Sequence record: NC_048173.1
DNA: 64,000 nt
Direction: 5' to 3' (one strand)
Shown here: positions 6,274 to 23,895 of the stretch, in pieces
Position numbering within the stretch: position 1 is the first letter of the stretch
Layout of the letters: every line of letters starts with the position of its first letter
The notes under the pieces: generated by a model
Told to the model about the DNA's origin: nothing
What the model saw: only the letters and a program-made list of their open reading frames with translations
Databases searched by the model: none
Position numbers and translations under genes: made by a program

Positions 6274-6798
6274 TTACAGGTTCGGAACGATTTTATTCCA
6301 TTCGATAGGGTGTTGTTTAATCACTGTTACCACACCACGAGTCGGTGACCAGACGGTTAAGTCCGGTTGGTTACGTACATCGAAATGGAACCAACTGATA
6401 TCGGTTTCGAGGAAGTGGATGAACGGGAATTCATTCGGGTTCTGCTGAATATACGCCCGTACAGCTTGCGGGGTGTAACTAACAAACGTTAAGTCCATCG
6501 CCCCGCCGTATTTGTGCATGCTGTCAGACGCCGCATAAAGCTCCAGAGCGCGTTCTTTATAATTGCCACCCTTTGGTTGCTCTTGATTAATAAAGAACTG
6601 TAGCGTGCGTACAGAGCGCTGTGTCATGCCTTTCGCAGGCGAGTTGACAATGATAGCGCCGAATTTGTTACGTAGCTGCTGTAAGGTGAGCATCACCAAC
6701 GGGTTAATGATGTACGCAGCGTTCTTACCCCGACGTTTGATGATGTCCGGCGGCATTAACTCTTCGAGTTTAAACTGGTTGGGGTTGGGCTGAAACAT
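6274..6798 (-). CDS. Peptidase M15-type Zn peptidoglycan peptidase
   Basis: Arg in RSVRT, S-x-H-x-x-G-x-A-x-D (SMHKYGGAMD) and WFHFDVR motifs supply the His/Asp/His zinc ligands of family M15A. Confidence 0.75.
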   Translation of the reverse strand: MFQPNPNQFKLEELMPPDIIKRRGKNAAYIINPLVMLTLQQLRNKFGAIIVNSPAKGMTQRSVRTLQFFINQEQPKGGNYKERALELYAASDSMHKYGGAMDLTFVSYTPQAVRAYIQQNPNEFPFIHFLETDISWFHFDVRNQPDLTVWSPTRGVVTVIKQHPIEWNKIVPNL

Positions 6799-7462
6799 TT
6801 GACTCTCCTGCGGTAGGGATAGGGTAGGTCAGAAATGCGCGTTTCACATTTAAGTAATGCACGTGCGCCTGTTGCGTGGTTCGTACCATGGTCATGTCCT
6901 GTGGTGGAATACCCACCGTTGGGAACTCACGGACGAACTCGTAGTTGGCGTTCATGTTAAACGTGTACGCGTTCGGTTTAAAGTAAATGCATCCTTTGTT
7001 GTTGTCGATAAACGACGTCAAGCCAAAATGCTTCACTGCCAAATAAAAGGACTGACGTGTAACCCAATTTACCCCGAGCGCTTTCATGGCATACAGGAAC
7101 ATGCGGTCAGCAAAGGTCTTGTCGATGAAGACGTTCAGTTTTCCTACGCCGTCGGAATGGTAGTTACCGATAATCGGAATCTTCTGGTAGAGCAGGTCGT
7201 GCAATGCGGCAGCAGGGCCGTAGTCGCCTTCCGGTTTAAACAAAAACTGGAGCTGTGTGGGTATTGATGCTAAATCGGTTACAAACCCTTTCGGGGCAAC
7301 CAAATATAAAGGCGTGTCGGCTTTTAACCCGGTTTCCTTTAAAATGACCTCGAGACGTGTCGGGTCGTCCTCAAACAGACCAGCTAAAGTAAAACCGAAG
7401 GTGTAGTCTTTCGTTAAGATAAACCACTGCTTATCAAAACGACAATACTCAAACTTATCCAT
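6770..7462 (-). CDS. DUF1353-like protein
   Basis: APKGFVTDLASIP, AAALHDLLY and ADRMFLYAM motifs typical of DUF1353. Confidence 0.75.
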   Translation of the reverse strand: MDKFEYCRFDKQWFILTKDYTFGFTLAGLFEDDPTRLEVILKETGLKADTPLYLVAPKGFVTDLASIPTQLQFLFKPEGDYGPAAALHDLLYQKIPIIGNYHSDGVGKLNVFIDKTFADRMFLYAMKALGVNWVTRQSFYLAVKHFGLTSFIDNNKGCIYFKPNAYTFNMNANYEFVREFPTVGIPPQDMTMVRTTQQAHVHYLNVKRAFLTYPIPTAGESNVSAQPQPV

Positions 7463-7493
7463 CTTGTTATCCTTCGTTTTACGTGGGGGTCAT

Positions 7494-7528
7494 AAAAAAA
7501 GAACAAAGGTGTGCCCCGAAGGGCACAC
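7494..7528 (-). terminator. Intrinsic terminator ending the peptide/radical SAM transcript
   Basis: GTGTGCCC-TTCG-GGGCACAC followed by CTTTGTTCTTTTTTT on the minus strand. Confidence 0.85.
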
Positions 7529-7530
7529 GC

Positions 7531-8187
7531 TTACAACTCAGCGATAAACTTCTCTTTCAAACCTTTGAGCGTCGTGTAATCACTTTTCTCAGCGGCAGTA
7601 CGAGCAGTCTGTTTAAAGTCGGTCATCTTTTCATGCAGCGCATTGGTACGCGCAACAATGGCTTCGTTCAACGCTTTCAAATCATCCAGCGTGAATTCGA
7701 ATTTCGCATTGTTGGTATCGACCCAGTAACCCGGATCTTGCTCTGTCGAAAGGTAACGACTAATCGCCGCCAGCGCCTTCTCATCGGTCTGGTAAACCCG
7801 GCCATTCAGTTCGAGTGGAGCGACCACTGCTTCACTGTACGCTTGGTTCACCCACGCAATGAGTTCGGTCAGTAACGCGACACACTTCCCGTGCGTCGAG
7901 ATACGCTCCGCCTGACGTTGAGCCAAATCAATCCCCAGCACATCACTGATAAAGGTGTGTGCAGACTTGAGCGTGAACTTAATCTCCAGTGGAGACAAGC
8001 CCTGCGCTTTCAGTTGGGTTGACAGCTCATCGTCTTTCATCCCATCCAGCAACCGGTAGTGTGCCAGACGAGACAACGACGGGTTCCAACGCGAGTCACT
8101 TAAATGCCCGTCCACAAACTGGCCGTGACGGTCAATCAGTTTCCCGCTGTTGAGGAAGCGATCTTTTATTTGGTCATTACTAAGCAT
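7531..8187 (-). CDS. DUF4376-like tail-fibre assembly-associated protein
   Basis: C-terminal half LNGRVYQTDEKALAAI..WVDTNNAKFEFTLDDLKALNEAI..KQTARTA matches the DUF4376 pattern from recall. Confidence 0.65.
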   Translation of the reverse strand: MLSNDQIKDRFLNSGKLIDRHGQFVDGHLSDSRWNPSLSRLAHYRLLDGMKDDELSTQLKAQGLSPLEIKFTLKSAHTFISDVLGIDLAQRQAERISTHGKCVALLTELIAWVNQAYSEAVVAPLELNGRVYQTDEKALAAISRYLSTEQDPGYWVDTNNAKFEFTLDDLKALNEAIVARTNALHEKMTDFKQTARTAAEKSDYTTLKGLKEKFIAEL

Positions 8188-8729
8188 TCAGTTTTCCCCA
8201 GGATGCCGACGTCTTTCAGCAGACCGTAGTCGAGGAACGAATAGTCCTTCGCCAAGTCATACTGCCAAACGAGGTTAGACACGCGCGATTCCACCGGCGT
8301 TTCTTCAGCAGTGTTGAACACCCCGATATGATCCCACAGCTCAAAGTAGTTGCACTGGTCTTTATTGTCGCGCACCACTTTGATTTTGTTATTCGGGAAC
8401 GACTGCGCCAAAGCAATCAGCGAGTCAACCTGCTTGTTACGCTTTGCACGGAACAGCACAGTCAACTTGCTCGGCGGGGTATCCAGCATACGCTGCTCTA
8501 AGCCGGCGTTACGCAGTTCAGCGTTCGCCAGTGAGTTATGGCCGTTCTCCACACAGTCCAGCTCAATGTGCACGTTCAGCGAGTGACGGATAACCAGCTT
8601 TTTCACTGTGTCGGTGTAGTTCTCTGCTTTACACAGGATGCTTACATCGAACAGCTTATGCTTCGTCAGAAAGGCATCCAGCAGCGTGGTATCAAGCCGA
8701 GTAAAATTGTGAATCATCAATGACTGCAT
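8166..8729 (-). CDS. Hypothetical protein of the radical SAM locus (187 aa)
   Basis: Start moved from the ORF-track 8879 to ATG 8729, which has an AGGA upstream and less overlap with the rSAM gene. No family recognised. Confidence 0.6.
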   Translation of the reverse strand: MQSLMIHNFTRLDTTLLDAFLTKHKLFDVSILCKAENYTDTVKKLVIRHSLNVHIELDCVENGHNSLANAELRNAGLEQRMLDTPPSKLTVLFRAKRNKQVDSLIALAQSFPNNKIKVVRDNKDQCNYFELWDHIGVFNTAEETPVESRVSNLVWQYDLAKDYSFLDYGLLKDVGILGKTECLVMTK

Positions 8730-10038
8730 TAGGCTTTTCCTGTTTTGCATGAACGTGTGGTTGAACAGCCTCTGGTTTCGCGCCAGAGAGTTTCGGAAGT
8801 TTGTTTTCCTGCGAGGCTTTAACACGGCACTCGTAGCAGTTGCACGACAACGGTTTGAACTGGTCACCGTAAGTACCAAAGCGACGTTCCCACCATTGGG
8901 CAGTTAACAGCTTAGCGGTGGTCCAGCCGCACTGACGACGCTCAGAGTGATACTGCTTACGCGCATCTTCTTCGCCATCGCCATTCTCGTACGCCGCGGC
9001 TACGCAGGACGCACAGATGTGTTTGGCCGGGCAACCCAGACAGGCATCAGGATACGACTGCCATTGGGTCTGGACTTCGTTCAGCAGCTTGCCGCCGTCG
9101 GTGTTGACAATCTCGCGACCCACGAGTTTCGCAATTGCCTGACGGGTGGTGACGGTAGACATGAAGCGGTTACAACCGTAGATGTTACGGTCAAAGCCGA
9201 GACAGGTCATGTGAACCGTGGTACCACAGTGCGGTTTCAGACGTTCAGGGTCGTAACGAATCTGATCGTTATGCTGTAACATCTCACGCCATTCCGGAGC
9301 CCACATGTTATCGATGTTCATGCCGCGTGGGGTGATGTGGCCCATCTCAGCAGTCGGGTCTAAGTGCAGACCTTTACCAATCCAGTATTCCAGCACTTCA
9401 ATCATCTGGTTAGAGATGCCGAGCGCCATATCACGTGGAATGATATCTTCGAAAATCATGTTACCGTAAATGGTACCACCGCCAGACTGGTCAATCAGCG
9501 ACTTCATGGACGCCGCGTAGTGCTTCAGCGTGTCATGGGTAAAGGTCGCTTTAATCCCGAGGTCGTTGATTTTCATCGACTTCAGGTAATGATACCCTTC
9601 CAGCGCTTTCTCGTAGGAACCTTTACGAGAGGTGGTGAAGATACGGTGACGGTCGTGGGTTTCCGGCAGACCATCGATTGACACGCCGATAGACAGTTTC
9701 GGATACCAGCGCTCAATGATTGAACGGTTTAACGGCTTATCAAAAAGCGTTCCGTTCGTGGAGATGGAGAACATGTACGGGCGGTTATCACGCGCCGCTA
9801 ACATCTCTGCAGTTTCGAAGGCCGCAATCAGCAGCTTCGGTTGCAGGAACGGTTCCCCACCGATAATGTCGATAATCGCGCCGCCTACATTCGGCTTGCC
9901 GCGGTCACGGTCAAAACAGGCGTGGATGAAGTCAACCACGTCATCTACACGGTTGTTACGCGGGAACTTGCGCTCGTAGCAATAATCGCAATCGAGGTTA
10001 CACGACAAGTTCGTAACAATCTGATACGTTACGTCCAT
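8692..10038 (-). CDS. Radical SAM/SPASM peptide maturase (Cxxx-repeat target type)
   Basis: CNLDCDYC, IIGGEPFL, STNGTL and SIDG..HDRHR core. SPASM Cys set CGTT..NIYGC..CLGCPAKHICASC..C. GAGGGG RBS. Confidence 0.9.
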   Translation of the reverse strand: MDVTYQIVTNLSCNLDCDYCYERKFPRNNRVDDVVDFIHACFDRDRGKPNVGGAIIDIIGGEPFLQPKLLIAAFETAEMLAARDNRPYMFSISTNGTLFDKPLNRSIIERWYPKLSIGVSIDGLPETHDRHRIFTTSRKGSYEKALEGYHYLKSMKINDLGIKATFTHDTLKHYAASMKSLIDQSGGGTIYGNMIFEDIIPRDMALGISNQMIEVLEYWIGKGLHLDPTAEMGHITPRGMNIDNMWAPEWREMLQHNDQIRYDPERLKPHCGTTVHMTCLGFDRNIYGCNRFMSTVTTRQAIAKLVGREIVNTDGGKLLNEVQTQWQSYPDACLGCPAKHICASCVAAAYENGDGEEDARKQYHSERRQCGWTTAKLLTAQWWERRFGTYGDQFKPLSCNCYECRVKASQENKLPKLSGAKPEAVQPHVHAKQEKPNAVIDDSQFYSA

Positions 10039-10051
10039 TACAACATCCCCC

Positions 10052-10927
10052 TCAGGACTGTGGCAAATTTAGGTAGGTGTGTAGATACTTGTAAGCCTCT
10101 ACACCGATGATTTGGGCCATGGCATTACAGCCTGAGTTAACGTAGAAGTCCACGTTCTCATTGTGCTTAATGTCACCGTTTGGTTCTACCAGTTTCAGCT
10201 GACCGCAAGCGTTACAGTTGGTGTGGTCGAAGAACTTCTCCAGACGGAACACCGTGTTGATACCGTTAACGCTGTTGAGATGCTGCATCTGTTCTTCAAT
10301 ACGCTTGTAGCCGTAAATGAAGTTCAGTACGTGGTCCTGATTGAGAGCTTTGTGCATCAGTTTGTCAAACGTCAGGGTCATAGCACCCACACGTAAGTGA
10401 TGCAGAGCAGCATGCAAACGCATGGTGTCTTCAAACCAGCGCGGCTTGCTAACGTGTTCGCGGGTCAGTACACCCCACGTAACCACATTGTCCAGCGCGT
10501 GCATGACTTCAAACGCTTCGTGCGCCCCTTCTTCCACAAACGCCATCAGACTGCGCTCGCCACCTTCGAAATGGTCGATGGAGACGATGATGCGGTCAAA
10601 CGTTTTCAGGAAGTCGAGTTGCGAGAGTTTGAGTTTTCGGCCGTTGGTAAACAGCAGGTGTTTTGCGGAAGGCACTTGCTCACGTGCTTCGCCTACAAAG
10701 TCAACTAACTTCTGGTAGGCCAATAACGGTTCGCCGCCCGTCCACAGGAATTCCTCTACTTGAGGATTTTCTTTTATAATGTCCACCATTGCCTCTTTGT
10801 GTTTTGTTTTCGAAACATCACCCTTGGCCATGTGAGCTGCCCCTCCACAGAAGGAGCAGTTCAGGTTGCACTTAGACGTCAGGGCAATGTCAATCATGGT
10901 AGCAGACGACTTAGGGGTATCGTGCAT
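10052..10927 (-). CDS. Second radical SAM protein (short, Twitch-like C-terminus)
   Basis: CNLNCSFC, WTGGEPLL, FTNG and VSID motifs. C-terminal CNAC..EPNGD..C. Start uncertain (10927 or 10897; the track start 10993 overlaps the upstream gene). Confidence 0.85.
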   Translation of the reverse strand: MHDTPKSSATMIDIALTSKCNLNCSFCGGAAHMAKGDVSKTKHKEAMVDIIKENPQVEEFLWTGGEPLLAYQKLVDFVGEAREQVPSAKHLLFTNGRKLKLSQLDFLKTFDRIIVSIDHFEGGERSLMAFVEEGAHEAFEVMHALDNVVTWGVLTREHVSKPRWFEDTMRLHAALHHLRVGAMTLTFDKLMHKALNQDHVLNFIYGYKRIEEQMQHLNSVNGINTVFRLEKFFDHTNCNACGQLKLVEPNGDIKHNENVDFYVNSGCNAMAQIIGVEAYKYLHTYLNLPQS

Positions 10928-11849
10928 CAGGGTTTTTGTTCCACAGATTTTCCATGAACGCGAATAACGGGTCGGAGACACGAACGTCTTCACCCGGGAC
11001 GATCAGTTTCGGGTCATGGTACGCTTTAAGAATAGCATCCAGCACCTTGTTGCGGTCGTTCAAACGCAGCAGCTCATCCACCGTCACAGTCTGACGGGTA
11101 AAGGAACTGACGGCATTCATCTCTTCGGCCGACAGCAGACCCGCTTCATTGACTTTACCGACCAAGAAGGTCAGTACACGATGTAAGTCAGCGGTAGTGT
11201 TAGGTTGCTCACCGTACTCATACTGCAACAGATAGTTGGTCCACGGCTTACGAATGCGTTTGGTAATCTCATGCGCATCGGTAATTGCGGTCCACTTCAT
11301 ATCACGGTGGTCCCATGTAAATTTATAGGAATACGCGAGCAGGTCGGCCAGACAGTCGATGCCTAACTCTTCGTACCCTTCAACCGGATAGTAACGCTCG
11401 AGGTTGAAATAACCCTCGTCAACGGTACCTTCTTCAACCAGCGTATAATAGAACGGGAACGAAGACGGGTATTCCCAGTTCCACTGACGCTGAATCATCG
11501 GCTTCATGCCGTGTTCTTTGAACGAAGCAAACACCATCTCCAGCGGCATGGAATAGTTCAGCACCGCATCCGTGAAGTAATACTTTTCGTTGACGAGCTT
11601 ACCGACGTATTCGGTTGTGCCATCGAGGTTGTACAGAATCTTAATCCGCAAACCATCCGGCGTGGTAAACTCTTCACGCACTTCTGCGTGATTTAAAATA
11701 TCACGCGGTCGCAGACGAGGGAATTCACCAGGGTTCATGCAAATCAAACGCAGGCGGTCATTCACGTGGTCGTTTACCGCGTCGGGCAGCCCAAGGTGTA
11801 TTGGGTAGTTAAAGTTGGTACGAAACGCCAAGTGTTCATTATTCTTCAC
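10911..11849 (-). CDS. Hypothetical protein of the radical SAM locus (312 aa)
   Basis: GTG start 10 nt after the peptide stop, preceded by TAAGGAG. Aromatic/acidic composition, no family recognised. Confidence 0.8.
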   Translation of the reverse strand: MKNNEHLAFRTNFNYPIHLGLPDAVNDHVNDRLRLICMNPGEFPRLRPRDILNHAEVREEFTTPDGLRIKILYNLDGTTEYVGKLVNEKYYFTDAVLNYSMPLEMVFASFKEHGMKPMIQRQWNWEYPSSFPFYYTLVEEGTVDEGYFNLERYYPVEGYEELGIDCLADLLAYSYKFTWDHRDMKWTAITDAHEITKRIRKPWTNYLLQYEYGEQPNTTADLHRVLTFLVGKVNEAGLLSAEEMNAVSSFTRQTVTVDELLRLNDRNKVLDAILKAYHDPKLIVPGEDVRVSDPLFAFMENLWNKNPDARYP

Positions 11850-11859
11850 GGATAGCTCC

Positions 11860-12069
11860 TTACGATGGCCACGTTACCGCTTTAGCGCCACCTGATGCTG
11901 ACCAGCTGCAGCTGCCGTTACAACGGTAGGCCCCAGCCGGAATATTGTTTAAACGGTTCGCGTTATTCACCGTCCCCCGCGTGGCGATATAGTTATTCGC
12001 AGACGCGGTCGTGATGTACCCTTCGAGACGGGCGATTTGTTGCGCAACCTCGTTCAGTGAAACAGCCAT
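11860..12069 (-). CDS. Short MAVSLN-leader peptide (2 Cys; truncated-core paralog)
   Basis: TAAGGAG RBS. 49-aa leader homologous to the two long peptides, then CNGSCSWSASGGAKAVTWPS. Confidence 0.85.
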   Translation of the reverse strand: MAVSLNEVAQQIARLEGYITTASANNYIATRGTVNNANRLNNIPAGAYRCNGSCSWSASGGAKAVTWPS

Positions 12070-12078
12070 AGCGACTCC

Positions 12079-12477
12079 TTACGGTCCTGAGCAACCAGAG
12101 CATCCCGTACAAGACGACGAACAGCTACCAGAGCAGCCGCCTGAACAGCCTCCCGAACAACTTGTAGAGCACGTACCGGAACAGGTTCCCGTACAGTTAC
12201 CCGAACAACCCCCAGCACAACCACCCGTACAGTTAGACGAGCACGAACCGCCACACGTCCCTGAACAAGTGCCTGTACAACCGCCAGAACATGCAGACCC
12301 GCATGACCAGCTACAAGTGCCGCCACAATGGTAATGGTTGGCGTCTTGACCGGCTAATCGGTCGACGTTGTTTGAAGTTTTACCGCCGATGTACGCTTGA
12401 ACCCCTGCTTCTGTTTTCAGTGCAGCGGATTCAATGTTGCTCATCTGGTTCTTTACTGCATTAAGTGATACAGCCAT
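12079..12477 (-). CDS. Cxxx-repeat Cys/Gly/Ser-rich peptide (putative radical SAM substrate) 2
   Basis: TAAGGAG RBS. 50-aa leader plus 82-aa core with 21 Cys (18 consecutive Cxxx units, then CTG-CSG-CSGP). Confidence 0.9.
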   Translation of the reverse strand: MAVSLNAVKNQMSNIESAALKTEAGVQAYIGGKTSNNVDRLAGQDANHYHCGGTCSWSCGSACSGGCTGTCSGTCGGSCSSNCTGGCAGGCSGNCTGTCSGTCSTSCSGGCSGGCSGSCSSSCTGCSGCSGP

Positions 12478-12488
12478 GGTCGCTCTCC

Positions 12489-12875
12489 TTACATCGGACC
12501 GGAACAGGCAGAACAGCCCGTACAGGAACTAGAACAAGAGCCAGAGCACCCGTGACCACATCCGCCAGAGCACGATGAGGAACAAGCACTACCACAACCA
12601 CCCACGCAGGTGCCGGTACAGGTCCCAGAGCAACTGCCTGAACACGTACCAGAACAACCACCGGAACAGTTACCGGAACAACTCGAGCAACCATAGGAGC
12701 ACCCAGACGAACATGTCCAGCTACAGCTACCGTTACAGCGAATGTCCCCGGGTGACATGCCACCCAGATTGTTTGCGTTAAATGCTTTGGTTGCAACCTG
12801 ATTGTCCACAGAAGGTCCTGTGGCCAAAGACAGTCTCGCAATTCGCGCATTAACGTCATTAAGTGAAACGGCCAT
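12489..12875 (-). CDS. Cxxx-repeat Cys/Gly/Ser-rich peptide (putative radical SAM substrate) 1
   Basis: AAAGGAAG RBS. 46-aa leader plus 82-aa core with 21 Cys, ending CSGSCSSSCTGCSACSGPM. Confidence 0.9.
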   Translation of the reverse strand: MAVSLNDVNARIARLSLATGPSVDNQVATKAFNANNLGGMSPGDIRCNGSCSWTCSSGCSYGCSSCSGNCSGGCSGTCSGSCSGTCTGTCVGGCGSACSSSCSGGCGHGCSGSCSSSCTGCSACSGPM

Positions 12876-12929
12876 ATGCTTCCTTTAACGGGCGAACTCG
12901 CATAGAGTAACGCCCTGACGTTATAAGAG

Positions 12930-14129
12930 TTATCTGGTACCTGCAGCCGACTGGAGGTCGTCGCGGGTAGTGAGGCTGTTGTTAACGTGAACAGCCGCTT
13001 GCACCACGCCACCGGTGTTTTTGTTGAGGTACTGGTCGTGTGGGTTAGCTGCAGACTGGTGCGCCGCCAAGGCCGCATTCGTGTTAGCCAATGCCTGTTC
13101 CAGAGCCGCGATGCGATTTTCGAGCCCTTGGTTCGAGTTAGCCATGTTCGCAATCTGCTGTTTCAGGTTACTGATTTCCTGATTAGCGGCCGCCAGTCCC
13201 TGATTAAGGGTACCGAGCTGTTGCGAGAGCAGACCGACCTGCGTTTCCAGCACCAGAATCTCATCCATCAGCTCAGCGATTTGCAGCTGGGTCTTCTGGT
13301 AGTTCTGGTCAACGGTGTTAAGCTGGGTGTTCCACGTGCCAATTGAGCTAACCAGTGCGGCAATCTGCTGCGTTAAGTTAGTGTCGGTTGCGCCCAGTGT
13401 GCCGATATCTTGCAGGACAGCGTTAATGCTACTCTGTACTGTTTGAATCTGTGCCCGGACTTCAGCGGTGGAGTACACATCCAACTGACCACGGGTCAGG
13501 TTGTGAACGTTACCTTCGGCCGTACGGTGCTCTTCTAATGCCGACAGCATCTCTTGACGATACGCTTTAAGCATGTTTTGAATCTGCACCATTTCAGCGG
13601 AAGCGCCGATACGGATAGCATCGTTCAGCTTAGACAGCAGCGTAACAATATATTCAAAACCGAAGAAGTCACCCATGTCGCGGAAGGCAGGTGCGCCCGC
13701 AAACTCATCCGGCACGTCACGCAGTTCAGCGAAGTTAATCGTCGGGTCATCTAAGTTCAGCGTATTGATACACTGAATGATGTTGTCCACGTTCGCGGCA
13801 TACGGGCCACCGACAATCTGAGCCGATGCCGTAATGTCTGCCGGGACTGACGATTTGGTAATGACAATGGCTGTGGCAATCTCACGTCCGCCGGCCTGTT
13901 TGGTCAGGGACGGGTGGAGCAGAATCACTTCGTAGTTGGTACCCCGAACGAGTGGCTGATTAGGCGCATTCACCGGAGCCATTCGAAGCGTATCAACAAA
14001 GAACGGACCTGTCGGGAAAGCAAACGCTCGGTTAACAGTACCGGTACCGAGTTTAATCGGATGCGATACAGCATTACTGAGGTTGGTTCCGAACAGGTCC
14101 AATGGGTATTGCATTGCTACCTTACTCAT
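12930..14129 (-). CDS. Coiled-coil tail-fibre-like virion protein
   Basis: N-terminal YPLDLFGTNLSN domain is shared with the three giant fibre genes. Long heptad region. HRTAEGNVH and HQSAANPHDQYL fibre motifs. Confidence 0.7.
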   Translation of the reverse strand: MSKVAMQYPLDLFGTNLSNAVSHPIKLGTGTVNRAFAFPTGPFFVDTLRMAPVNAPNQPLVRGTNYEVILLHPSLTKQAGGREIATAIVITKSSVPADITASAQIVGGPYAANVDNIIQCINTLNLDDPTINFAELRDVPDEFAGAPAFRDMGDFFGFEYIVTLLSKLNDAIRIGASAEMVQIQNMLKAYRQEMLSALEEHRTAEGNVHNLTRGQLDVYSTAEVRAQIQTVQSSINAVLQDIGTLGATDTNLTQQIAALVSSIGTWNTQLNTVDQNYQKTQLQIAELMDEILVLETQVGLLSQQLGTLNQGLAAANQEISNLKQQIANMANSNQGLENRIAALEQALANTNAALAAHQSAANPHDQYLNKNTGGVVQAAVHVNNSLTTRDDLQSAAGTR

Positions 14130-14156
14130 CGGAAAAACTCCTTGTGGTGAGTAAAG

Positions 14157-14180
14157 AGTGGGGAGCCGAAACTCCCCACT
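14157..14180. terminator. Strong hairpin (weak or bidirectional terminator, or RNA stability element)
   Basis: AGTGGGGAG-CCGAAA-CTCCCCACT. Followed by CTTTAC on the minus strand and TTATTT on the plus strand. Confidence 0.55.
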
Positions 14181-14184
14181 TTAT

Positions 14185-17100
14185 TTACACGCTCAGGGTG
14201 GAATCATGAATCATAACATCAAGGACAGTTGCCGTTGTTGCATCAAAATAGATGTCAACGTACTTGCCGCCCGCGAATGCACGTTCTTCCGTCCAGAACA
14301 TAACCGGAGCTTTCGCCCCGCCCGATTGACGCATTGCCAGAATATAATCTTTCCCCGTAGGGACGGCGATGGTCTGGCCGCCCACTGCATTAGTACCAGT
14401 TAGCGTGGTTGGACTTGCAGGATTAGGTATCTTCACGCCCGTCATTGCAGCATTGGATACCGCGAGTTTTGTCGTACCGTCTTGCACCAGCTCGAACGCA
14501 ATATAGCACGGCGAGTTACCCGGGGCTTCATTAACAACGAAGGCCAGCGCGTTAGGCTGATTTAACAGCGCACCAGTCAGATTCAACGTAGCGTTACCCG
14601 ACAACGTTCCTTTAGAAACGCCGTTAAGGTATACATCCGCTGAATCATCTACTTGCACATTCAACACCAACGATGTTGATGTTGGTGTAAACGTGGTTTT
14701 CGTTGCCCAAGCGGTTCCGGCTGCCAGTTTACTCTCTGGGATGAGGGTAATTGCTGGTGAAGCCAGTGGTGGGCTATAGGCGCTAGCACGTGTCCCAACA
14801 TTCGGCCAAAGTTTCTCGGCATAGTTGGTCAGTAACATCCACGGCGCGGGGGACGCAGGGAAAGACAGGCGCTGGACTGTGTCGAAGTTACCGCCTAACT
14901 GGTTTGCTGTTTCCAGCGCTGCAGCAGTACCGTAAGACTTCGTTAAATCCGCACCCGGACGAGTGATGTTCCAGAATCGTGTAGCATTCTGAGACGTGGC
15001 CCCGTACCCAAAGCGACAACTGCGTGCAAAGGTCGGTGCTGCTGTCACCAAGTCCACTTCCGCGTATTTATACGTGGCTGTGTTTCTCAGCTGACTTAAC
15101 GTTAACCCTTTCTTCGCCGCAATGATGGCTCGGATATTGTCATCGCGTACACCGGTGGTCGGCAGTAGTGCATGTTCTACCGCGATATACAGCATGTTAC
15201 CGCGACGTTCAGCATACACGTGCGCATACCACTTACTCCATGCCAGCAAGTCCGTGGTATCCGCATCCAACGTGGCGATTAACTTAGATGACGCCTGACG
15301 GTAGTTCTCTTTGAGCTGAATCAGACCAGACAGGTTAACGTGCGACTCAATTGAGTTGCCGATAGCCAGACATAACGTCTTCTCGACGTTTGCCGTGGTG
15401 TCTTCCTTCTTCAGCGCAGCAAGCACTACTGCAACCCCGTCGTTGTCACCGTCGTTGGACGTGATAACCGTGTTGAACACATAGTCACCCACCAATTCAT
15501 CCGAGATAAAGCCCACGAACGTTGCGGTGTTTAACGTACATTCAACGACGTCGTCGGCTGCCACGTATTTCCATGCTGCCAGTTCGGAGTCATTCGCCGG
15601 CTGGTCTGCAGTGGAGTTGTTGTGGCTGAAACGGTACCAGCTGTTATAGATGTCTGCGAACGATGGGAAGGCAAACGAGTCTACCGTCCCCAAGTTTTCC
15701 ATGTTCGAGTACAACGTATCTGGCGCAGCCGCACTTGGCAGGTAGTTGTGTGCATAGCGGTTGTCAGCATGACTCAACAGTGCACCTACACGGCCCAGAC
15801 GTTTCACACGGCTGATTTTCGCTTCGGTAATCGCGTTGCTGGATGTTGTTGCATAACCGATATACAACCGGGAGTCAGTATCAGCAAGTTTCGTTTTCGA
15901 GACCAGATACTCCGCCGCTCCAGACGCGTTTAACTGCACATGGAAATAGAGCGTAGCATTCTGGTAGTCCGTAGGGAATAGCGTTTTGAAATCGAACGTC
16001 GCCGCAGGGACAAGGTGGTCTTCCATCTTCGCAAAGAACGGAACCGCTTGCGTGATGTACAGAATCATCCCTTCTGCGACTTGCGGGCCAAAGAGAATTG
16101 TGGGGCGACCACCGGTTTCAAACGCAATACCTTTCCCGCTGTAAACCGTCCCCCCTAGATAAACTCCGAGCATTACAAAACCAATTTTTGCGATCTCATC
16201 CGTTTCCTGAAGATACACATAATCGATTTCATTATTAGACGGGTTAAACGAAATACGCGTGCCTGTCCATGTTGTCAAATCTTGAGAGATTTTCAACAGG
16301 TAACTCAAGTCGGTACTAGAGCTACTGGTATTCACACGACATAGCGTTCTTGTCCTTAATAACCAGCCGTCGGCACGCTTAATCAAACGCATCTGACTCA
16401 TCTCTGCCAAATCATTGAGCGTGACCGCAGACACCCTGAATTTCTCTTCCTTCCACACCTCGACACCACTGATCATCGACAGAGAAATAATTCCATTGTC
16501 AAACGTCATCGGGATACGGTAGAAATAAGTGCTGTTATCAAACCCACCGGCCGTAGCGTTCGGAGTCAGAATACAAGTTTGCAGCACGCAGAGGTTTTGT
16601 CCTCCGAAGTCAAAGATACTCAGCCAAGCGATACGCAGCGTAGGATCAATAGCCAACCAGCCCGGAATTTTCGCGTCTAAGAAGTTTTCAATAGCTGACC
16701 ACTGCTCAGCACTGATAGCAACCCTCTCGTTGGTGATGACGGTGGTGCCTGCAATATTTCGATACGCACGACTTTCTGCCTTTCTAAACGAAGCACCGTT
16801 GAGATAGGATTGGCTACCGTTATAGACTTGTCCCAGGCGACAAATCGCTTCGTAGTCATTTTGCGACACGGTCTCACGATCATTAGACGGCCCCCAACCC
16901 GTATAATCCGGCACACCGTAGGTAGTGTCCGTGTCGTACGCGATGCTCATACACGACCCGGTGCTACGTTGACGAAGAAGCATTTTCTTGGCAGTGCCGC
17001 CCAAAGCCGCCATCCCGCGCATTCTAAGAATGTACGGCGAAGCGTATGGACCAAGCACATTCACACTGTTTCCAATTAAGTTGGTCCAATCGGCATTCCA

Positions 17101-19872: not shown

Positions 19873-22800
19873 TTATTCCTTTTCAAGATTTAGCTGCGTA
19901 ACCACGAAGTCCCAGTTACGCTGGGTCAGGTTCCATGGGTTCTGCATTGCAATCATTGGGATTTTACCGAACTCGTAAGCATACCAATTCGCCACGTTTG
20001 TTTCGAGCGTCTTGGTCGTGTTGTCGTTGTACGTGATGGTAAACTTCGCTTTCACGAAACACGTTAAAGCGCCTGCCGTTGGTTCAGTGGTTACGGTGAA
20101 GTAACCTTTAAAGTTAGCACTCGGCACATAATTGATAGTTGCTGTAGCGTTACCCACCGCACCCGCTTGGTTGGACTTAGCAACCTGTAGACCATCTACC
20201 CACGCGCTTAGTACACCCTGTCCCGCGAGATTCACGGACACAGTTTTGGCGTTGGTCAATAGTCCCGGCTCGATATGCGTTGCGGCATAACCCCGACGAT
20301 TAAGGTTTGCCAATCCGATAGCAGTCCCCGCATCAGTTCCCGGGTTCAGGAAATCATCCGTCAGTACCGGTGTTACCCCAAACGTTGACTCACGCGAACC
20401 CGTCGTCCACAGCCCGTGAGGAACCGCGTACGAGGCAGTGTCGCGTAAAATGTTCGTCGTCTCTTCGGTGAGTATCACCTGTGTGGCAATATCCACGTCC
20501 GCCATCTCTGTACCTAAGAAGAACCCAACACGACCACGTTGGAGTCCGTTCTTTTTCGCCGCATACGCCGACAGCTCAGAGCCACGGATATACGACTTAA
20601 TAAGGCCAGTGTGGTAGTTCAGACGCGTCAGGTATTCCGTTGGGATACTGCAATCAAAGATAGAACCCATGATGCGGTAGCCCAGTTTGCTTGAAGAGGC
20701 GTAACCGACGTACGGCCCTTCAAAGAAACGCGAAATGTCCTGTTCGAACACCAAGGTGCAGAAACGGTGAACCTCAACGCGAGTGTCGTCGTCCACTACC
20801 CCGATAAGGATATTAAGACGCTTTTCTGCCGGGATATAACGGTAGCGTGTAGCCAGTACCCGCGGTTTCTTAATACTCGTACCGTCGACGTGGGTCGGGA
20901 AGTTAAAGCTTGCTGCTACTTCAACATCTTCAGCGCGTACAAATGGGACGAGGTTAGTCCGTGGGATTTCAACATACGGCAACGCAACCGGCTGCGGGGT
21001 CACTTCATTAACGAACGCAATCGATGCCTGTGCTTTCGCCGCGATATCAATCGCAAACAAAGACAGTACCTCGTGCTTACCGTTAACGGGGGCGGCAACA
21101 AACTCGAGAATCCCCGACTCGTTCGACATGAAGGAACCGTCGTAGGTGACTTGTCGTTTTGCCTGCGGGTTGGCCATGTTCTTCCAACGATAAGGAGACT
21201 GACCCTTCACCCCAACCCACACCCGTAGCCCACCTGCCGCGGCAGCGCCTTCTGCTACCACGAGAGTACCTTGCGTACGCAACGCCATTCCCGCCGTGTT
21301 AGAGAACATTGCCACGCTCGGGGTCGAGGTCACTGACTTATCGGCCACACCGTACGGCTCAGTAATCTCCAAACCGGGCACTTTCACATCAGCAGGACTG
21401 TAGTCGCTCGCTGTCGTGTCAATACCGCCGTGGGCGCGCTGGTCAGCAATATGCTCTTGCAGCTCACGGAACTGACCGAAGTCAATCACTTGGTTAAACT
21501 GAATCGGGCCACCTGAGGTAATCACTGCGGTAGCGTTCGTGTCAACGTAACCCAGATACAACATCTCAGTGTTCAGCGAGTCACTCGGTACCGGTGCACC
21601 CACCGCTTGGAATTTACCCAAGGTAACGTTTCCGTAAATAAAGAAACGCATGTTGGCAGTAGGCAGGTTGTTGGCGATGGTGCCGACCTTGGTAGCCGCC
21701 GAACTGTTGTACACAGGTGTAGCGCCGTCCATGACATCGAAGGCAATCGACGCTGGCTTAGTGGTGTCTTCGCACAACGACAGAATAGCAATCGCATGCA
21801 CACCCGGCAGTAACTCGATTTCCACATTCGGATCGGTCGCTGCTTCAATAACCGGGTTTTCATCCACCCAGATAGACACTTTACCCGCAGACCGTACGCG
21901 GATTTTGATAATGTCATCCGTAAAGCGCAAACGCACCTTCGCTGCCAGTCGCACGTTAGCCCCGCCCAAACGGTTATTCGCCGTAGAAACAGCAACCGCT
22001 TGTGGCAATGGGTTAGCCGGCTGGGTGTTATGCACCACACCCGCATTCCAGTTGTTCTCGATACCGCACGCGGTGTAATACCACGTCCCGCTCGGCACCG
22101 CCGCAAGGTTAACCACCCCGTCAAACGTCCCTTCCGCTGAGTCAAGGGCACGAGCCACGAAATAACGGTACGCCGTGGTCGGCGTCAGGTTCCAGCCCGA
22201 TACGTTAAAGGTGACCGACTCCACCGTCGTGAACTCTAAGGTGTCTTTGTACATCACACCGAAGAAACGTTTGTTGATATCCGCCAAACGGTCGTTCAAC
22301 GCTTTAAGTACCGCGGGGGCAACCGCCTGACCGTCTTCCACTTCAGAAAGCTGGGAGGCAATCTTCACGGTACCGTACGCCATGCGGGTGGCTTGCCCAA
22401 TCTGCAGCATTGACCAGTCGTGCTTGTGGTCTTTGGCTACTAAGGCATCCGTACGCGCCTTCTGCGGCGTTGAGAGCGGTTTATTCAAGTCAGCAGTGTT
22501 ATCTACCGAACCCAAGTTTAAATCGCCCTTATCGAGGGTAATGCCGGCACCGGACATCGGCTTGTTGTTAATCAACAGCGTCTTCGGCACCATGTCATTA
22601 AAACCGTCGTTGTACGGCTTACCGGAGGCGGGCGTGGCCGCTACGCCATCAGCCACTGCACCCGGGCCTGTTACGAGTTTTACCTTTCCCGGGAGCGCTT
22701 TGGTGGCTTTCGGGATGTTCAGGTCAGCTTCAAGCGGTGCAGACGGTGTACCTTTCCCTTTGAACGTCATGTTCGTTGAGGAGATATTAATCTGCACGTT

Positions 22801-23895
22801 CTCAGGGTCGCCGTTAACGTCCTTCGACTGATACTTCTTCACCGTACGGCCAGTCAGTAAAGCCACACCGTTTAAGGTGAGCTTATCAACGCCCAATGCT
22901 GTACCGTTGGTGGTAACCCGCAGGGTGTTCGTCCCACAGACATACTCAACGTATTTCGCGCCTGACAAGTCCGTCCCTGCCGCTGCCACAATACCACCTT
23001 GTGTAATCAGCTGAATCTTCGCAGCCGACAGAATCAGTTTGGTGGTGTTGGTGCTATCAGCAATAACGGTGGCTCCGTCCGCAAACTGGAAGGTGCCTTT
23101 AACGTTCTTCGACAGATAGCGGTGGAGGTACAGTTGGATATCCGCATCGGACAAACCCTGTGAGCGAATGTTTTCAATCAGCTCGCGCAGGTTTTTCCCG
23201 TAGGCCAGAAACGTATCCGGAACTTCCAACCCGACCGGGTGCGCGTTAAGCTGGGTCGGGGTGACACTGTGCGGGTCAGTTGCCGCAATGTGCGCCGGGT
23301 AGTTAAACGCTTCGATATCCGTGAACAGTTGGTTCGCCTGTCGCGTTAATGCTTGCAAGTCCGTTTTCAGGTCTTGCACATCGGCATCAACAGCAGCCGC
23401 CACATCATCCACAGCAGATGCGGTGTACTGTTTGTTTTTGGCATCGGCCCAACTGGTATAGCTGGGCTTTTGTGGGAACAGCGCAGGCACCCCATTCAGC
23501 GAACGGTAGCTGGCCGAACGGGGGTTGTTAATGTACTTAATCAGGTAGTCCAGAATCTCTGTCAGCGGGTCGTAGAAATCACCCCCCAACAGATTTCCGT
23601 TGAACACGAGATTACCACTGATTTCAGGATTAATGAACTGGACACCGCAGTAGACCGGTGGTGCATCTGTAGCCAATGAAGCCTTCAGTGCCGACAGCTC
23701 ATAAACGTATTCGTAGTCGGAGCCTTCGTCCAACGGGGTGGTGCTATTCCCGTTGAAGATTTGTAACGCCCCGAAGAACGGGGCATGGCTTAACATGATA
23801 ACACGGTCGGTGTTCTCATTGGACTCGAGAATACGCTCCTCAGTGAAGACGTTAGTAGTCGCCTTCCCTGTCGGGTCGTACGGATATCTAGTCAT
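19873..23895 (-). CDS. Giant tail-fibre-like protein (1340 aa)
   Basis: YPYDPTG N-domain. HIAATDPH, LGSVDNTADLNKPLS and HKHDWS motifs. Paralog of its neighbours. Confidence 0.75.
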   Translation of the reverse strand: MTRYPYDPTGKATTNVFTEERILESNENTDRVIMLSHAPFFGALQIFNGNSTTPLDEGSDYEYVYELSALKASLATDAPPVYCGVQFINPEISGNLVFNGNLLGGDFYDPLTEILDYLIKYINNPRSASYRSLNGVPALFPQKPSYTSWADAKNKQYTASAVDDVAAAVDADVQDLKTDLQALTRQANQLFTDIEAFNYPAHIAATDPHSVTPTQLNAHPVGLEVPDTFLAYGKNLRELIENIRSQGLSDADIQLYLHRYLSKNVKGTFQFADGATVIADSTNTTKLILSAAKIQLITQGGIVAAAGTDLSGAKYVEYVCGTNTLRVTTNGTALGVDKLTLNGVALLTGRTVKKYQSKDVNGDPENVQINISSTNMTFKGKGTPSAPLEADLNIPKATKALPGKVKLVTGPGAVADGVAATPASGKPYNDGFNDMVPKTLLINNKPMSGAGITLDKGDLNLGSVDNTADLNKPLSTPQKARTDALVAKDHKHDWSMLQIGQATRMAYGTVKIASQLSEVEDGQAVAPAVLKALNDRLADINKRFFGVMYKDTLEFTTVESVTFNVSGWNLTPTTAYRYFVARALDSAEGTFDGVVNLAAVPSGTWYYTACGIENNWNAGVVHNTQPANPLPQAVAVSTANNRLGGANVRLAAKVRLRFTDDIIKIRVRSAGKVSIWVDENPVIEAATDPNVEIELLPGVHAIAILSLCEDTTKPASIAFDVMDGATPVYNSSAATKVGTIANNLPTANMRFFIYGNVTLGKFQAVGAPVPSDSLNTEMLYLGYVDTNATAVITSGGPIQFNQVIDFGQFRELQEHIADQRAHGGIDTTASDYSPADVKVPGLEITEPYGVADKSVTSTPSVAMFSNTAGMALRTQGTLVVAEGAAAAGGLRVWVGVKGQSPYRWKNMANPQAKRQVTYDGSFMSNESGILEFVAAPVNGKHEVLSLFAIDIAAKAQASIAFVNEVTPQPVALPYVEIPRTNLVPFVRAEDVEVAASFNFPTHVDGTSIKKPRVLATRYRYIPAEKRLNILIGVVDDDTRVEVHRFCTLVFEQDISRFFEGPYVGYASSSKLGYRIMGSIFDCSIPTEYLTRLNYHTGLIKSYIRGSELSAYAAKKNGLQRGRVGFFLGTEMADVDIATQVILTEETTNILRDTASYAVPHGLWTTGSRESTFGVTPVLTDDFLNPGTDAGTAIGLANLNRRGYAATHIEPGLLTNAKTVSVNLAGQGVLSAWVDGLQVAKSNQAGAVGNATATINYVPSANFKGYFTVTTEPTAGALTCFVKAKFTITYNDNTTKTLETNVANWYAYEFGKIPMIAMQNPWNLTQRNWDFVVTQLNLEKE

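What the first reader, a model, noticed from the sequence alone, without database searches (positions are those of the whole stretch)
12079..12875. Twin precursors with exactly matched 82-aa, 21-Cys cores
Counted from the translations. Peptide 1 has a 46-aa leader and peptide 2 a 50-aa leader, yet both cores are 82 aa with 21 Cys. Both open with C-x-G-x-C-S-W-x-C and close with CSGSCSSSCTGCSxCSGP. Spacers are almost only G/S/T/A/N. Peptide 2 has 18 perfect Cxxx units; peptide 1 has one Cxx unit near its start. Conserved length and Cys number despite divergent internal sequence suggest a ruler-like structural constraint, such as co-assembly in register or a fixed-length rigid rod, rather than free repeat expansion.
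Basis: partly seen in the sequence, partly recalled or inferred. Interest (0 to 1): 0.85.

Follow-up and report, generated by a model that had tools for sequence, protein, structure and literature searches.

The report
Radical-SAM-matured cysteine-repeat phage fibre proteins
A giant Erwinia phage encodes three small proteins, two of them with a cysteine at every fourth residue, next to two radical-SAM enzymes inside its tail-fibre genes; they are probably enzyme-cross-linked tail parts rather than antibiotic-like peptides, and nobody has studied them.

Summary
The window is Erwinia phage Derbicus. On the minus strand, 12489-12875 (128 aa) and 12079-12477 (132 aa) each end in an 82-aa region with 21 Cys. 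RefSeq annotates wrong-frame ORFs over both. The set is followed by an orphan-fold protein, a short radical-SAM enzyme and a radical-SAM/SPASM enzyme.

The two peptides reach the cut-off of NCBIfam TIGR04114, the CXXX-repeat radical-SAM target family. The SPASM enzyme is a divergent relative of TIGR04115 and PapB, below both cut-offs.

The module lies in the tail/baseplate gene block. Homologous head-plus-CXXX regions are fused to true tail-fibre domains in other phages. I therefore read these as tail-fibre-type structural proteins cross-linked by radical-SAM enzymes, not secreted RiPPs. The chemistry is unknown.

The ruler idea is only partly supported. Among related jumbo phages the upstream peptide always has 21 Cys, but core lengths differ by 0-9 aa between the two peptides. 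Family-wide, Cys counts run from 8 to 95. The match is not a recent duplication.

Verdict: a new variant of a known but uncharacterised kind.

The parts
12489..12875 (-). pepA: 128-aa protein with a 46-aa fibre-like N-terminal part and an 82-aa CXXX-repeat region (21 Cys). Not annotated in this frame in RefSeq.
   Evidence: phrog_6085 at 4.5e-43. TIGR04114 at 20.0 bits, cut-off 20. Codon-position bias 20/11/65.
12079..12477 (-). pepB: 132-aa paralog with a 50-aa N-terminal part and an 82-aa CXXX-repeat region (21 Cys).
   Evidence: phrog_6085 at 2.1e-40. TIGR04114 at 23.8 bits. Codon-position bias 11/11/74.
11860..12069 (-). pepC (RefSeq gp160): 69-aa third paralog. It has the same N-terminal part and head motif (CNGSCSW) and then a short tail (ASGGAKAVTWPS), with no repeats.
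   Evidence: phrog_6085 at 2.4e-24, covering profile positions 1-67. A pepC of 68-69 aa was found in most of the 15 phage sets and in L007.
12711..12737 (-). Head motif of pepA (CNGSCSWTC).
   Evidence: The motif co-occurs with the gp159-like gene across loci: 18/1/2/57, Fisher p = 1.6e-14.
12301..12327 (-). Head motif of pepB (CGGTCSWSC).
11902..11922 (-). Head motif of pepC (CNGSCSW).
10911..11849 (-). gp159: 312-aa protein of unknown function (phrog_8030) that belongs to the module.
   Evidence: phrog_8030 at 2e-148. AF2 model with pLDDT 85 and pTM 0.82. No PDB fold match, best E 0.42. In BFVD only its own ortholog matches. Present in all 'type I' loci. No relative found in 185,579 species genomes.
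10052..10927 (-). gp158: short radical-SAM enzyme (291 aa as annotated) with a CNLNCSFC cluster motif and no full SPASM domain.
   Evidence: PF04055 at 43.1 bits and PF13353 at 37.9 bits. Best NCBIfam hit is HxsC at 49 bits, far below cut-off. Sequence.
8692..10038 (-). gp157: 448-aa radical-SAM/SPASM enzyme and the likely maturase of the CXXX regions.
   Evidence: PapB NF047865 at 113.2 bits and TIGR04115 at 111.5 bits, both below cut-off. C13/C17/C20 plus seven conserved C-terminal Cys. Best solved relative is 5wgg, E 8.3e-8. 89 of 91 loci with a relative also carry a CXXX ORF.
12930..14129 (-). gp163: 399-aa virion structural protein with a coiled coil, directly upstream.
   Evidence: phrog_2163 at 3.1e-99. 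Its SPN3US ortholog gp167 was found in virions but not in tailless particles (PMC5105663, Tables S1 and S4).
6770..8729 (-). Downstream neighbours kept in the jumbo-phage clade: gp156 (8166-8729), gp155 (7531-8187, weak tail-protein PHROG hits) and a tail assembly chaperone (6770-7462).

Best explanation
pepA, pepB and pepC are small tail-fibre-type structural proteins of phage Derbicus.

Each begins with about 46-50 residues that resemble a tail-fibre shaft repeat, followed by a conserved head motif (C-x-G-x-C-S-W). pepA and pepB continue into a positionally conserved run of about 21 C-[S/T]-G-x units. pepC stops after the head motif.

The four genes pepA, pepB, pepC and gp159 are joined by stop-codon/Shine-Dalgarno overlaps (TAAGGAG), which suggests co-expression.

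In the reducing cytoplasm the SPASM radical-SAM enzyme gp157 most likely installs many Cys-derived cross-links along the CXXX run. Thioethers to neighbouring backbone or side-chain carbons are the likeliest product. This would turn a sequence with no predicted fold into a rigid stalk or tip that resists proteases and redox changes. The short radical-SAM enzyme gp158 and the orphan-fold protein gp159 probably act on, or recognise, the head motif.

What is shown:
- The reading frame and its conservation.
- The family assignment of the peptides.
- The tight linkage between enzyme and substrate genes.
- The tail-module context.
- The fusions to fibre domains in other phages.

What is inferred:
- Incorporation into the virion.
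- The cross-link chemistry.
- The division of labour between the enzymes.
- Any heteromeric A/B/C assembly.
For: 1. pepA and pepB reach the TIGR04114 cut-off. All three peptides hit phrog_6085.
2. gp157 has CxxxCxxC plus a seven-Cys SPASM pattern. Its nearest families are PapB and TIGR04115, and its nearest solved relative is 5wgg.
3. 89 of 91 loci that carry a gp157 relative also carry a CXXX-rich ORF. In cellular genomes the figure is 59 of 80.
4. The same order (pepA, pepB, pepC, gp159-like, short rSAM, SPASM rSAM) occurs in four jumbo-phage genera and in an unrelated 76-kb phage contig.
5. Context. The module sits between a virion protein and a tail assembly chaperone. The SPN3US orthologs of the upstream genes (gp167-170) are tail-associated in virion mass spectrometry, while the two rSAMs and the gp159-like protein are absent from virions (PMC5105663).
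6. Position in podoviruses. In T7-like contigs the module sits at the tail-fibre position, after a Phage_T7_tail protein. It lies beside a paralog that carries collagen-like G-X-Y repeats in place of CXXX.
7. Fusions. The head plus CXXX region is the C-terminus of proteins with PF12571 (138.8 bits) or with tail-fibre PHROGs.
8. Leader positions 5-35 match the repeats of a 654-aa protein (P0095) that reads as a fibre protein; no family search was run on it. Some pepC-like proteins carry an added C-terminal region of about 75-140 residues.
9. No peptidase or exporter was detected among the ten flanking ORFs that were scanned.
10. The head motif co-occurs with the gp159-like gene (Fisher p = 1.6e-14).
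Against: - None of the three proteins has been detected in a virion. The SPN3US proteomics could not have seen pepA or pepB, because they appear not to have been annotated and their cores have no tryptic sites.
- gp157 scores far below the TIGR04115 and PapB cut-offs.
- The cores contain no Asp or Glu, so the known PapB acceptor chemistry cannot apply as such (PMC12373016).
- AlphaFold2 gives no structure for the core, with pLDDT 33-44.
- The motif/enzyme association is not corrected for phylogeny.
- Cellular family members with Tat signals are small secreted proteins, not fibres. The repeat may therefore serve different ends in different hosts.
Confidence: 0.55

Rival explanations
1. A classical RiPP. 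pepA and pepB are precursors whose leaders are cut off. The modified Cys-rich cores are released at lysis as bioactive peptides, for example antimicrobial or signalling molecules that benefit the phage or the lysing host.
For: - The layout (short ORFs followed by rSAM/SPASM genes) is that of RiPP clusters.
- The peptides belong to a family defined as radical-SAM targets.
- Cellular relatives are small peptides with Tat signals placed next to TatC.
Against: - No peptidase or exporter among the ten flanking ORFs that were scanned.
- gp157 has no N-terminal leader-binding domain. Its rSAM core starts at residue 12, which aligns with residue 106 of 5wgg.
- The 'leader' is fused in-line in long tail-fibre proteins and resembles fibre repeats.
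- The module lies inside tail gene blocks in unrelated phage types.
Confidence: 0.15
2. Metal-binding proteins. The CXXX runs bind Zn, Cu, Fe or Fe-S clusters, in the manner of metallothioneins. They either stiffen a fibre through metal-thiolate clusters or serve the neighbouring Fe-S enzymes.
For: - The cores are 25.6% Cys with small spacer residues.
- Cellular relatives use the Tat pathway. From general knowledge, Tat exports folded or cofactor-loaded proteins.
- No fold is predicted for the apo chain.
Against: - The tight, family-wide linkage to a peptide-modifying SPASM enzyme clade is not explained by metal binding alone.
- Tat export is equally expected for a chain already cross-linked in the cytoplasm.
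- No match to any metallothionein or other Pfam family.
Confidence: 0.12
3. A structural Cys-repeat domain held by disulfides or left unmodified. The two rSAM enzymes would carry out a different, local change, for example at the C-S-W head motif only, or at Ser or Gly residues.
For: - The head motif tracks the extra enzyme pair.
- pepC has the head motif but no repeats, yet is retained in the phage sets.
- The cores lack the acidic acceptors used by PapB.
Against: - 'Type II' loci with only the SPASM enzyme still carry long CXXX runs and lack the C-S-W motif. The SPASM enzyme therefore tracks the repeats, not the head motif.
- Disulfides would not form in the cytoplasm where the phage assembles (general knowledge).
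Confidence: 0.13
4. An artefact. The Cys-rich frames are non-coding by-products of a repetitive DNA stretch, and the annotated other-frame ORFs (gp161, gp162) are the real genes.
For: Several GenBank and RefSeq records annotate other frames or the other strand here.
Against: - Substitutions pile up at third codon positions of the Cys frame: 65 against 20 and 11, and 74 against 11 and 11.
- The Cys-frame ORFs, their starts and their ribosome-binding sites are conserved in at least 15 phages. The annotated alternatives differ from record to record.
- HMM matches to two independent family libraries.
Confidence: 0.01

Closest known systems
CXXX-repeat radical-SAM target system (NCBIfam TIGR04114 / Pfam PF27846 peptides with the TIGR04115 maturase). 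It is defined by comparative genomics, and I found no experimental study of it.
   Same: - Runs of Cys at every fourth residue with small spacers.
- A SPASM radical-SAM gene next to the peptide genes.
- Often two or more peptide genes in tandem.
- pepA and pepB reach the TIGR04114 cut-off.
   Different: - gp157 scores 111.5 bits against a cut-off of 350. Cellular and many viral maturases score 367-617.
- The Derbicus module adds a second rSAM, an orphan-fold protein, a repeat-less third paralog and a C-S-W head motif in place of C-[S/T]-G-L-C.
- There is no Tat signal.
- It lies in a phage tail gene block.
PapB / freyrasin ranthipeptide system
   Same: - The best-scoring characterised maturase family for gp157 (113.2 bits).
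- The substrate has several short Cys-containing repeats, each expected to give a small thioether ring.
   Different: - Below the family cut-off of 340 bits.
- PapB links Cys to an acidic residue or a C-terminal carboxylate and docks on a leader through an RRE domain (PMC12373016).
- The Derbicus cores have no Asp or Glu, and gp157 has no N-terminal RRE.
CteB (PDB 5wgg), an rSAM/SPASM enzyme. From my own knowledge it is the thioether-forming maturase of a SCIFF-type peptide.
   Same: It is the only solved structure found by sequence, with E 8.3e-8 over the rSAM core. Both have auxiliary-cluster Cys patterns.
   Different: Only residues 12-172 align. gp157 lacks the first ~100 residues of CteB. 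The substrates differ, with 6 Cys in about 45 residues against 21 Cys in 82.
Collagen-like (G-X-Y) and other repeat stalks in phage tail fibres
   Same: - A low-complexity periodic segment of variable length between or after globular fibre domains.
- In contig L008 a paralog with the same N-terminal domain carries G-X-Y repeats where the other carries CXXX.
   Different: The period is 4 with Cys rather than 3 with Gly. A dedicated enzyme set is also needed.
His-Xaa-Ser repeat system (HxsB/HxsC paired radical-SAM enzymes)
   Same: A repeat peptide with two adjacent rSAM genes. gp158's best NCBIfam hit is HxsC (49 bits), and gp157 also hits HxsB (54 bits).
   Different: The scores are far below the cut-offs of 268 and 370. 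The repeat chemistry is different.

Membership tests
CXXX-repeat radical-SAM target peptides (TIGR04114 / PF27846) | Score at or above the curated HMM cut-off (20 bits) | tested here: met
   pepB scores 23.8 bits and pepA 20.0 bits, which is exactly at the cut-off. pepC has no hit. PF27846 is not in the local Pfam copy, but it is recorded on many homologs.
CXXX-repeat radical-SAM target peptides (TIGR04114 / PF27846) | Long run of Cys at every fourth residue | tested here: met
   17 and 18 Cxxx units in pepA and pepB. Spacer lengths across 108 family proteins are 3 (2572 cases), 2 (465) and 4 (16).
CXXX-repeat radical-SAM target peptides (TIGR04114 / PF27846) | Gene adjacent to a radical-SAM/SPASM maturase of the TIGR04115 clade | tested here: inconclusive
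   Adjacency is met. The maturase is related to TIGR04115 but scores below its cut-off.
CXXX-repeat radical-SAM target peptides (TIGR04114 / PF27846) | N-terminal twin-arginine signal. This is a feature of the Bacteroidales members seen here, and may not be defining. | tested here: not met
   The Derbicus peptides have no RR motif. Many Bacteroidales loci do have a Tat signal.
TIGR04115 CXXX-repeat maturase (gp157) | Score at or above the curated cut-off (350 bits) | tested here: not met
   111.5 bits. Type II viral and cellular enzymes score 367-617 bits.
TIGR04115 CXXX-repeat maturase (gp157) | CxxxCxxC cluster motif plus C-terminal SPASM Cys pattern | tested here: met
   C13, C17 and C20, with C271, C289, C333, C336, C342, C345 and C370 invariant in the alignment.
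PapB-type ranthipeptide system | Score at or above the NF047865 cut-off (340 bits) | tested here: not met
   113.2 bits.
PapB-type ranthipeptide system | Acidic acceptor (Asp or Glu) C-terminal to each donor Cys | tested here: not met
   Neither core contains D or E. The requirement is as described in PMC12373016.
PapB-type ranthipeptide system | N-terminal leader-binding (RRE) domain on the maturase | tested here: not met
   The gp157 rSAM core starts at residue 12, which aligns with residue 106 of 5wgg. No RRE-like fold was found in gp159 by Foldseek.
PapB-type ranthipeptide system | Thioether cross-links in the product | not testable with these tools
   This needs mass spectrometry or NMR of the modified protein.
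Classical RiPP precursor (leader removed, core exported) | Leader peptidase and/or exporter encoded in the cluster | tested here: not met
   None was found among the ten ORFs scanned between 6770 and 14129 by Pfam (seven ORFs), NCBIfam or PHROGs. The three large upstream genes were not scanned.
Phage tail-fibre proteins | Homologous region found within proteins that carry recognised tail-fibre domains | tested here: met
   The L022 protein has PF12571 at 138.8 bits followed by a C-terminal CXXX run (no phrog_6085 match was listed among its top 25 hits). L023, L026 and P0069 have tail-fibre PHROGs with phrog_6085 at the C-terminus.
Phage tail-fibre proteins | Gene lies in the tail/baseplate morphogenesis block | tested here: met
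   The SPN3US orthologs of the flanking genes are tail-associated. In T7-like contigs the module follows the Phage_T7_tail protein.
Phage tail-fibre proteins | Protein present in purified virions | not testable with these tools
   Published SPN3US virion proteomics lists none of gp163-166. pepA and pepB appear not to have been annotated, so they could not have been scored.
His-Xaa-Ser paired radical-SAM system | HxsB and HxsC scores at or above their cut-offs (370 and 267.9 bits) | tested here: not met
   54 and 49.1 bits.

The most novel reading that the evidence does not exclude
Radical-SAM 'RiPP-type' chemistry is used here to build part of a virus particle. Under this reading pepA, pepB and pepC assemble through their fibre-like N-terminal parts, perhaps as a heterotrimer. 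They are locked at the C-S-W head motif by gp158 and gp159. The two 21-unit CXXX tails are then stitched by gp157 into a covalently cross-linked, register-matched rod or tip on the tail fibre or baseplate. This would be the first enzyme-installed thioether (or related) cross-linking of a phage structural protein. The same module is used by jumbo myoviruses and by T7-like podoviruses.
Probability: 0.35. Interest if true: 0.85.

Novelty: new variant of a known kind. Interest (0 to 1): 0.62.

Why it matters
If correct, this links two fields that have not met. One is radical-SAM peptide maturation, so far studied as natural-product biosynthesis. The other is virion assembly.

It would give a first functional setting for the CXXX-repeat family, which has only been defined by genomics and for which I found no paper. 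A scan of IMG/VR found 369 viral contigs encoding a relative of the maturase.

It would also define a new kind of covalently stabilised fibre element, and a new three-protein enzyme set that includes an orphan fold.

On the practical side, the genes are mis-annotated in several reference phage genomes. Virion proteomics of these well-studied jumbo phages (SPN3US, CR5, PhiEaH2 relatives) has therefore been blind to them.

Tried and rejected
- Pfam gave no family for the peptides. PF27846 is missing from the local copy.
- Eight of the ten literature searches found nothing relevant. The terms covered the CXXX repeat, TIGR04114/04115, PF27846, jumbo phage plus radical SAM, ranthipeptide plus phage, radical SAM plus tail fiber plus thioether, EarlPhillipIV plus radical SAM, SPN3US plus radical SAM, and SPASM plus bacteriophage plus tail fibre. 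The two useful returns were the PapB paper and the SPN3US proteomics papers. A cyanophage paper that mentioned a phage rSAM maturase was unrelated.
- gp159: no PDB match by sequence, none by fold, and only its own ortholog in BFVD.
- AlphaFold2 of pepB gave no usable model, with pLDDT 46.
- The first attempts at locus searches and at structure prediction failed on input rules.
- No gp159 relative was found in the species-representative genomes.
- Recent duplication or gene conversion as the cause of the match is rejected, because codons are randomised between the paralogs.
- Co-evolution of the pepA and pepB C-terminal tails is left open. Within-phage tail identity is higher than cross-phage (0.66 against 0.47; naive permutation p = 0.0002). 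However, the commonest tail type is ancestral to both paralogs, and the test ignores phylogeny.
- DNA-level tandem repeats are weak, at 73-75% matches. Slippage-driven length change is therefore not expected, which weakens length stability as evidence for selection.
- No promoter or terminator signal above chance was found around the genes.
Full report
**Identity of the window and the observation**

The stretch 10800-14200 is 100% identical to Erwinia phage Derbicus (NC_048173), a 224-kb jumbo phage. Its close relatives are EarlPhillipIV, pEa_SNUABM_38, Phobos and Cronobacter phage CR5.

On the minus strand there are two ORFs, 12489-12875 (pepA, 128 aa) and 12079-12477 (pepB, 132 aa).
- N-terminal parts of 46 and 50 aa, and cores of 82 and 82 aa with 21 Cys each.
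- The opening motif C-x-G-x-C-S-W-x-C and the closing motif CSGSCSSSCTGCSxCSGP.
- 18 Cxxx units in pepB, and one early Cxx unit in pepA.

The cores are 25.6% Cys, against 1.2% in the window's long ORFs, and contain no D, E, K or R.

Two qualifications apply. First, pepA's 82 residues include a terminal Met beyond the shared CSGP end, so the landmark-to-landmark lengths are 81 and 82. This is pepC (11860-12069, 69 aa). It has the same MAVSLN start and the same head motif, and it then ends.

**The reading frame**

RefSeq annotates other-frame ORFs over both peptides (gp161 and gp162). The Phobos and CR5 records annotate ORFs on the opposite strand. The Cys frame is nevertheless the real one:
- Against Phobos, differences by codon position are 20/11/65 for pepA, 11/11/74 for pepB and 8/7/37 for pepC.
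- Each gene has a strong ribosome-binding site. The junctions pepA-pepB, pepB-pepC and pepC-gp159 all read TAAGGAG, with the stop codon inside the Shine-Dalgarno sequence. This suggests coupled translation.

**What the genes are**

pepA and pepB reach the cut-off of NCBIfam TIGR04114, 'Cys-rich repeat-containing protein' (model name tSAM_targ_Cxxx), at 20.0 and 23.8 bits against a cut-off of 20. All three peptides match phrog_6085, which has no assigned function.

Downstream lie three genes:
- gp159 (phrog_8030, unknown function).
- gp158, a short radical-SAM enzyme.
- gp157, a 448-aa radical-SAM/SPASM enzyme.

The best families for gp157 are PapB (113 bits, cut-off 340) and TIGR04115, the CXXX-repeat maturase (111.5 bits, cut-off 350). 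It has the CxxxCxxC motif and seven conserved C-terminal Cys. Its only solved relative by sequence is 5wgg. The rSAM core begins at residue 12, so the enzyme has no N-terminal leader-binding domain.

**Linkage between enzyme and substrate**

A scan of IMG/VR found 369 viral contigs that encode a relative of gp157. In species-representative cellular genomes the nearest relatives are at most 31% identical and come mostly from Clostridia and Bacteroidales. There, 59 of 80 loci carry CXXX ORFs, and many of these have Tat signals.

The loci fall into two module types.
- **Type II** has the SPASM enzyme only. That enzyme passes the TIGR04115 cut-off at 367-617 bits. The substrates start with C-x-x-x-C-[S/T]-G-L-C.
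- **Type I**, which includes Derbicus, adds a gp159-like protein and a second rSAM (fused to the first in some podovirus contigs). Its SPASM enzyme falls below the cut-off at 111-178 bits. Its substrates start with the C-S-W head motif.

The head motif and the gp159-like gene co-occur in 18/1/2/57 dereplicated loci (Fisher p = 1.6e-14; not corrected for phylogeny). No gp159 relative was found in 185,579 species genomes. Its confident AlphaFold2 model (pLDDT 85) matches nothing in the PDB, and in BFVD it matches only its own ortholog.

**Why I read these as fibre parts rather than secreted RiPPs**

1. *Context in Derbicus.* The module lies between a virion structural protein (gp163) and a tail assembly chaperone. 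Further upstream are three very large ORFs (1894, 1340 and 1209 aa), annotated as virion structural proteins.
2. *Proteomics in a relative.* In SPN3US, the orthologs of gp163 and of the large upstream genes (gp167-170) are present in virions and missing from tailless particles. The two rSAMs (gp163, gp164) and the gp159-like protein (gp165) are not in virions (PMC5105663, Tables S1 and S4). That is the pattern expected of assembly enzymes.
3. *Position in podoviruses.* In T7-like contigs the module follows the Phage_T7_tail protein. It sits beside a paralog that has collagen-like G-X-Y repeats where the other has CXXX.
4. *Fusions.* The head-plus-CXXX region forms the C-terminus of proteins with the tail-collar fibre domain PF12571 (138.8 bits) or with tail-fibre PHROGs. 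In some proteins it lies between other domains.
5. *The 'leader'.* A profile of the N-terminal part plus head motif finds only 32 clusters among 1.84 billion representatives. These include pepC-like proteins with an added C-terminal region, and a 494-aa protein that ends in the module. Profile positions 5-35 also match, several times over, the repeats of a 654-aa protein that reads as a fibre protein, though no family search was run on it.
6. *Missing parts.* No peptidase or exporter was detected among the ten flanking ORFs that were scanned.

**Chemistry**

This is inferred, not shown. The nearest characterised enzymes make Cys thioethers. PapB, however, needs an acidic acceptor (PMC12373016) and the cores have none. 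The acceptors must therefore be Ser, Thr, Gly or backbone carbons, or else the reaction is a different one.

The unit consensus in the jumbo-phage clade is C-[S 63%, G 15%, T 13%]-[G 58%]-[G/S/T]. AlphaFold2 predicts no fold for the unmodified core. That fits a need for modification, a partner or a metal.

**The ruler idea**

Among 15 distinct jumbo-phage sets, pepA always has 21 Cys, although its length ranges from 78 to 84 aa. pepB has 20-23 Cys and 80-92 aa. In the Erskine- and SPN3US-like phages pepB has one 8-residue gap between Cys (for example CSGSASGTC). I read this as a Cys replaced by Ala, which leaves 21 unit slots. The Cys columns of pepA and pepB align one to one.

The paralogs are old. 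Their core DNA is 62% identical. The shared 18-aa tail is 17/18 identical in protein but 38/54 in DNA, and synonymous codons are randomised. Recent duplication and gene conversion are therefore excluded.

On the other side, exact equality of length is not conserved: 84/83, 83/92 and 78/82. A distant phage has 15 and 16 Cys. Family-wide counts run from 8 to 95, with co-resident paralogs as different as 13 against 40. Because the DNA repeats are weak, length stability is partly the default expectation.

My conclusion is that unit number is conserved within this clade, which is compatible with paired assembly. There is no general ruler.

**Verdict**

This is a real and well-conserved module, mis-annotated in reference genomes. 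It is a divergent, phage tail-associated variant of the known but uncharacterised CXXX-repeat radical-SAM target family. Its function is inferred from context and from domain fusions. The chemistry and the incorporation into virions remain to be tested.

Noticed in passing
window 12054-12326 and 12461-12859 (minus strand); also L002 6272-7093 and L003 6645-6857: Reference records annotate wrong-frame or wrong-strand ORFs over the Cys-repeat genes. These are Derbicus gp161 and gp162, Phobos gp167 and gp168, and CR5_157. pEa_SNUABM_38 annotates nothing there.
   Followed up: yes
window 11860-12069 (minus strand): A third paralog, pepC, keeps the N-terminal part and the C-S-W head motif but has no repeats. 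A pepC of 68-69 aa was found in most related phage sets. In other phages (P0086, P0090) pepC-like proteins carry an extra C-terminal region of about 75-140 residues.
   Followed up: partly
window 10911-11849 (minus strand): gp159 (phrog_8030) gives a confident AlphaFold2 model (pLDDT 85) with no match in the PDB, and in BFVD it matches only its own ortholog. It appears to be an orphan fold restricted to phage modules that have the C-S-W head motif.
   Followed up: partly
L008 7632-7988 and 8001-8621: In a T7-like metagenomic phage contig, two adjacent paralogs share an N-terminal domain. One continues with collagen-like G-X-Y repeats and the other with 30-Cys CXXX repeats. A fused double radical-SAM protein of 668 aa follows.
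   Followed up: partly
L013 3133-3959 and other jumbo-phage loci: The C-terminal ~20 residues of pepA and pepB are often more alike within one phage than between phages. In L013 they are identical over 20 aa, yet only 5 of the 20 codons are the same. This points to protein-level constraint or old exchange, not to recent gene conversion.
   Followed up: partly
window 11849-12492 (minus strand): The junctions pepA-pepB, pepB-pepC and pepC-gp159 all place the stop codon inside a TAAGGAG Shine-Dalgarno sequence, 6-8 nt before the next start codon. This suggests coupled translation of the four genes.
   Followed up: no
L031, L051, L097 and others: Some viral and cellular family members are very large: 79, 92 and 95 Cys in proteins of 420-480 aa. 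In a few proteins (L090, L034, L028) the CXXX run lies between or before other protein segments rather than at the C-terminus.
   Followed up: no
window 12930-14129 and 19873-23895 (minus strand): A profile built from gp163 (the 399-aa virion protein) also hits the 1340-aa protein encoded at 19873-23895 (E 6e-9). The small and large tail/baseplate proteins here therefore share a domain.
   Followed up: no
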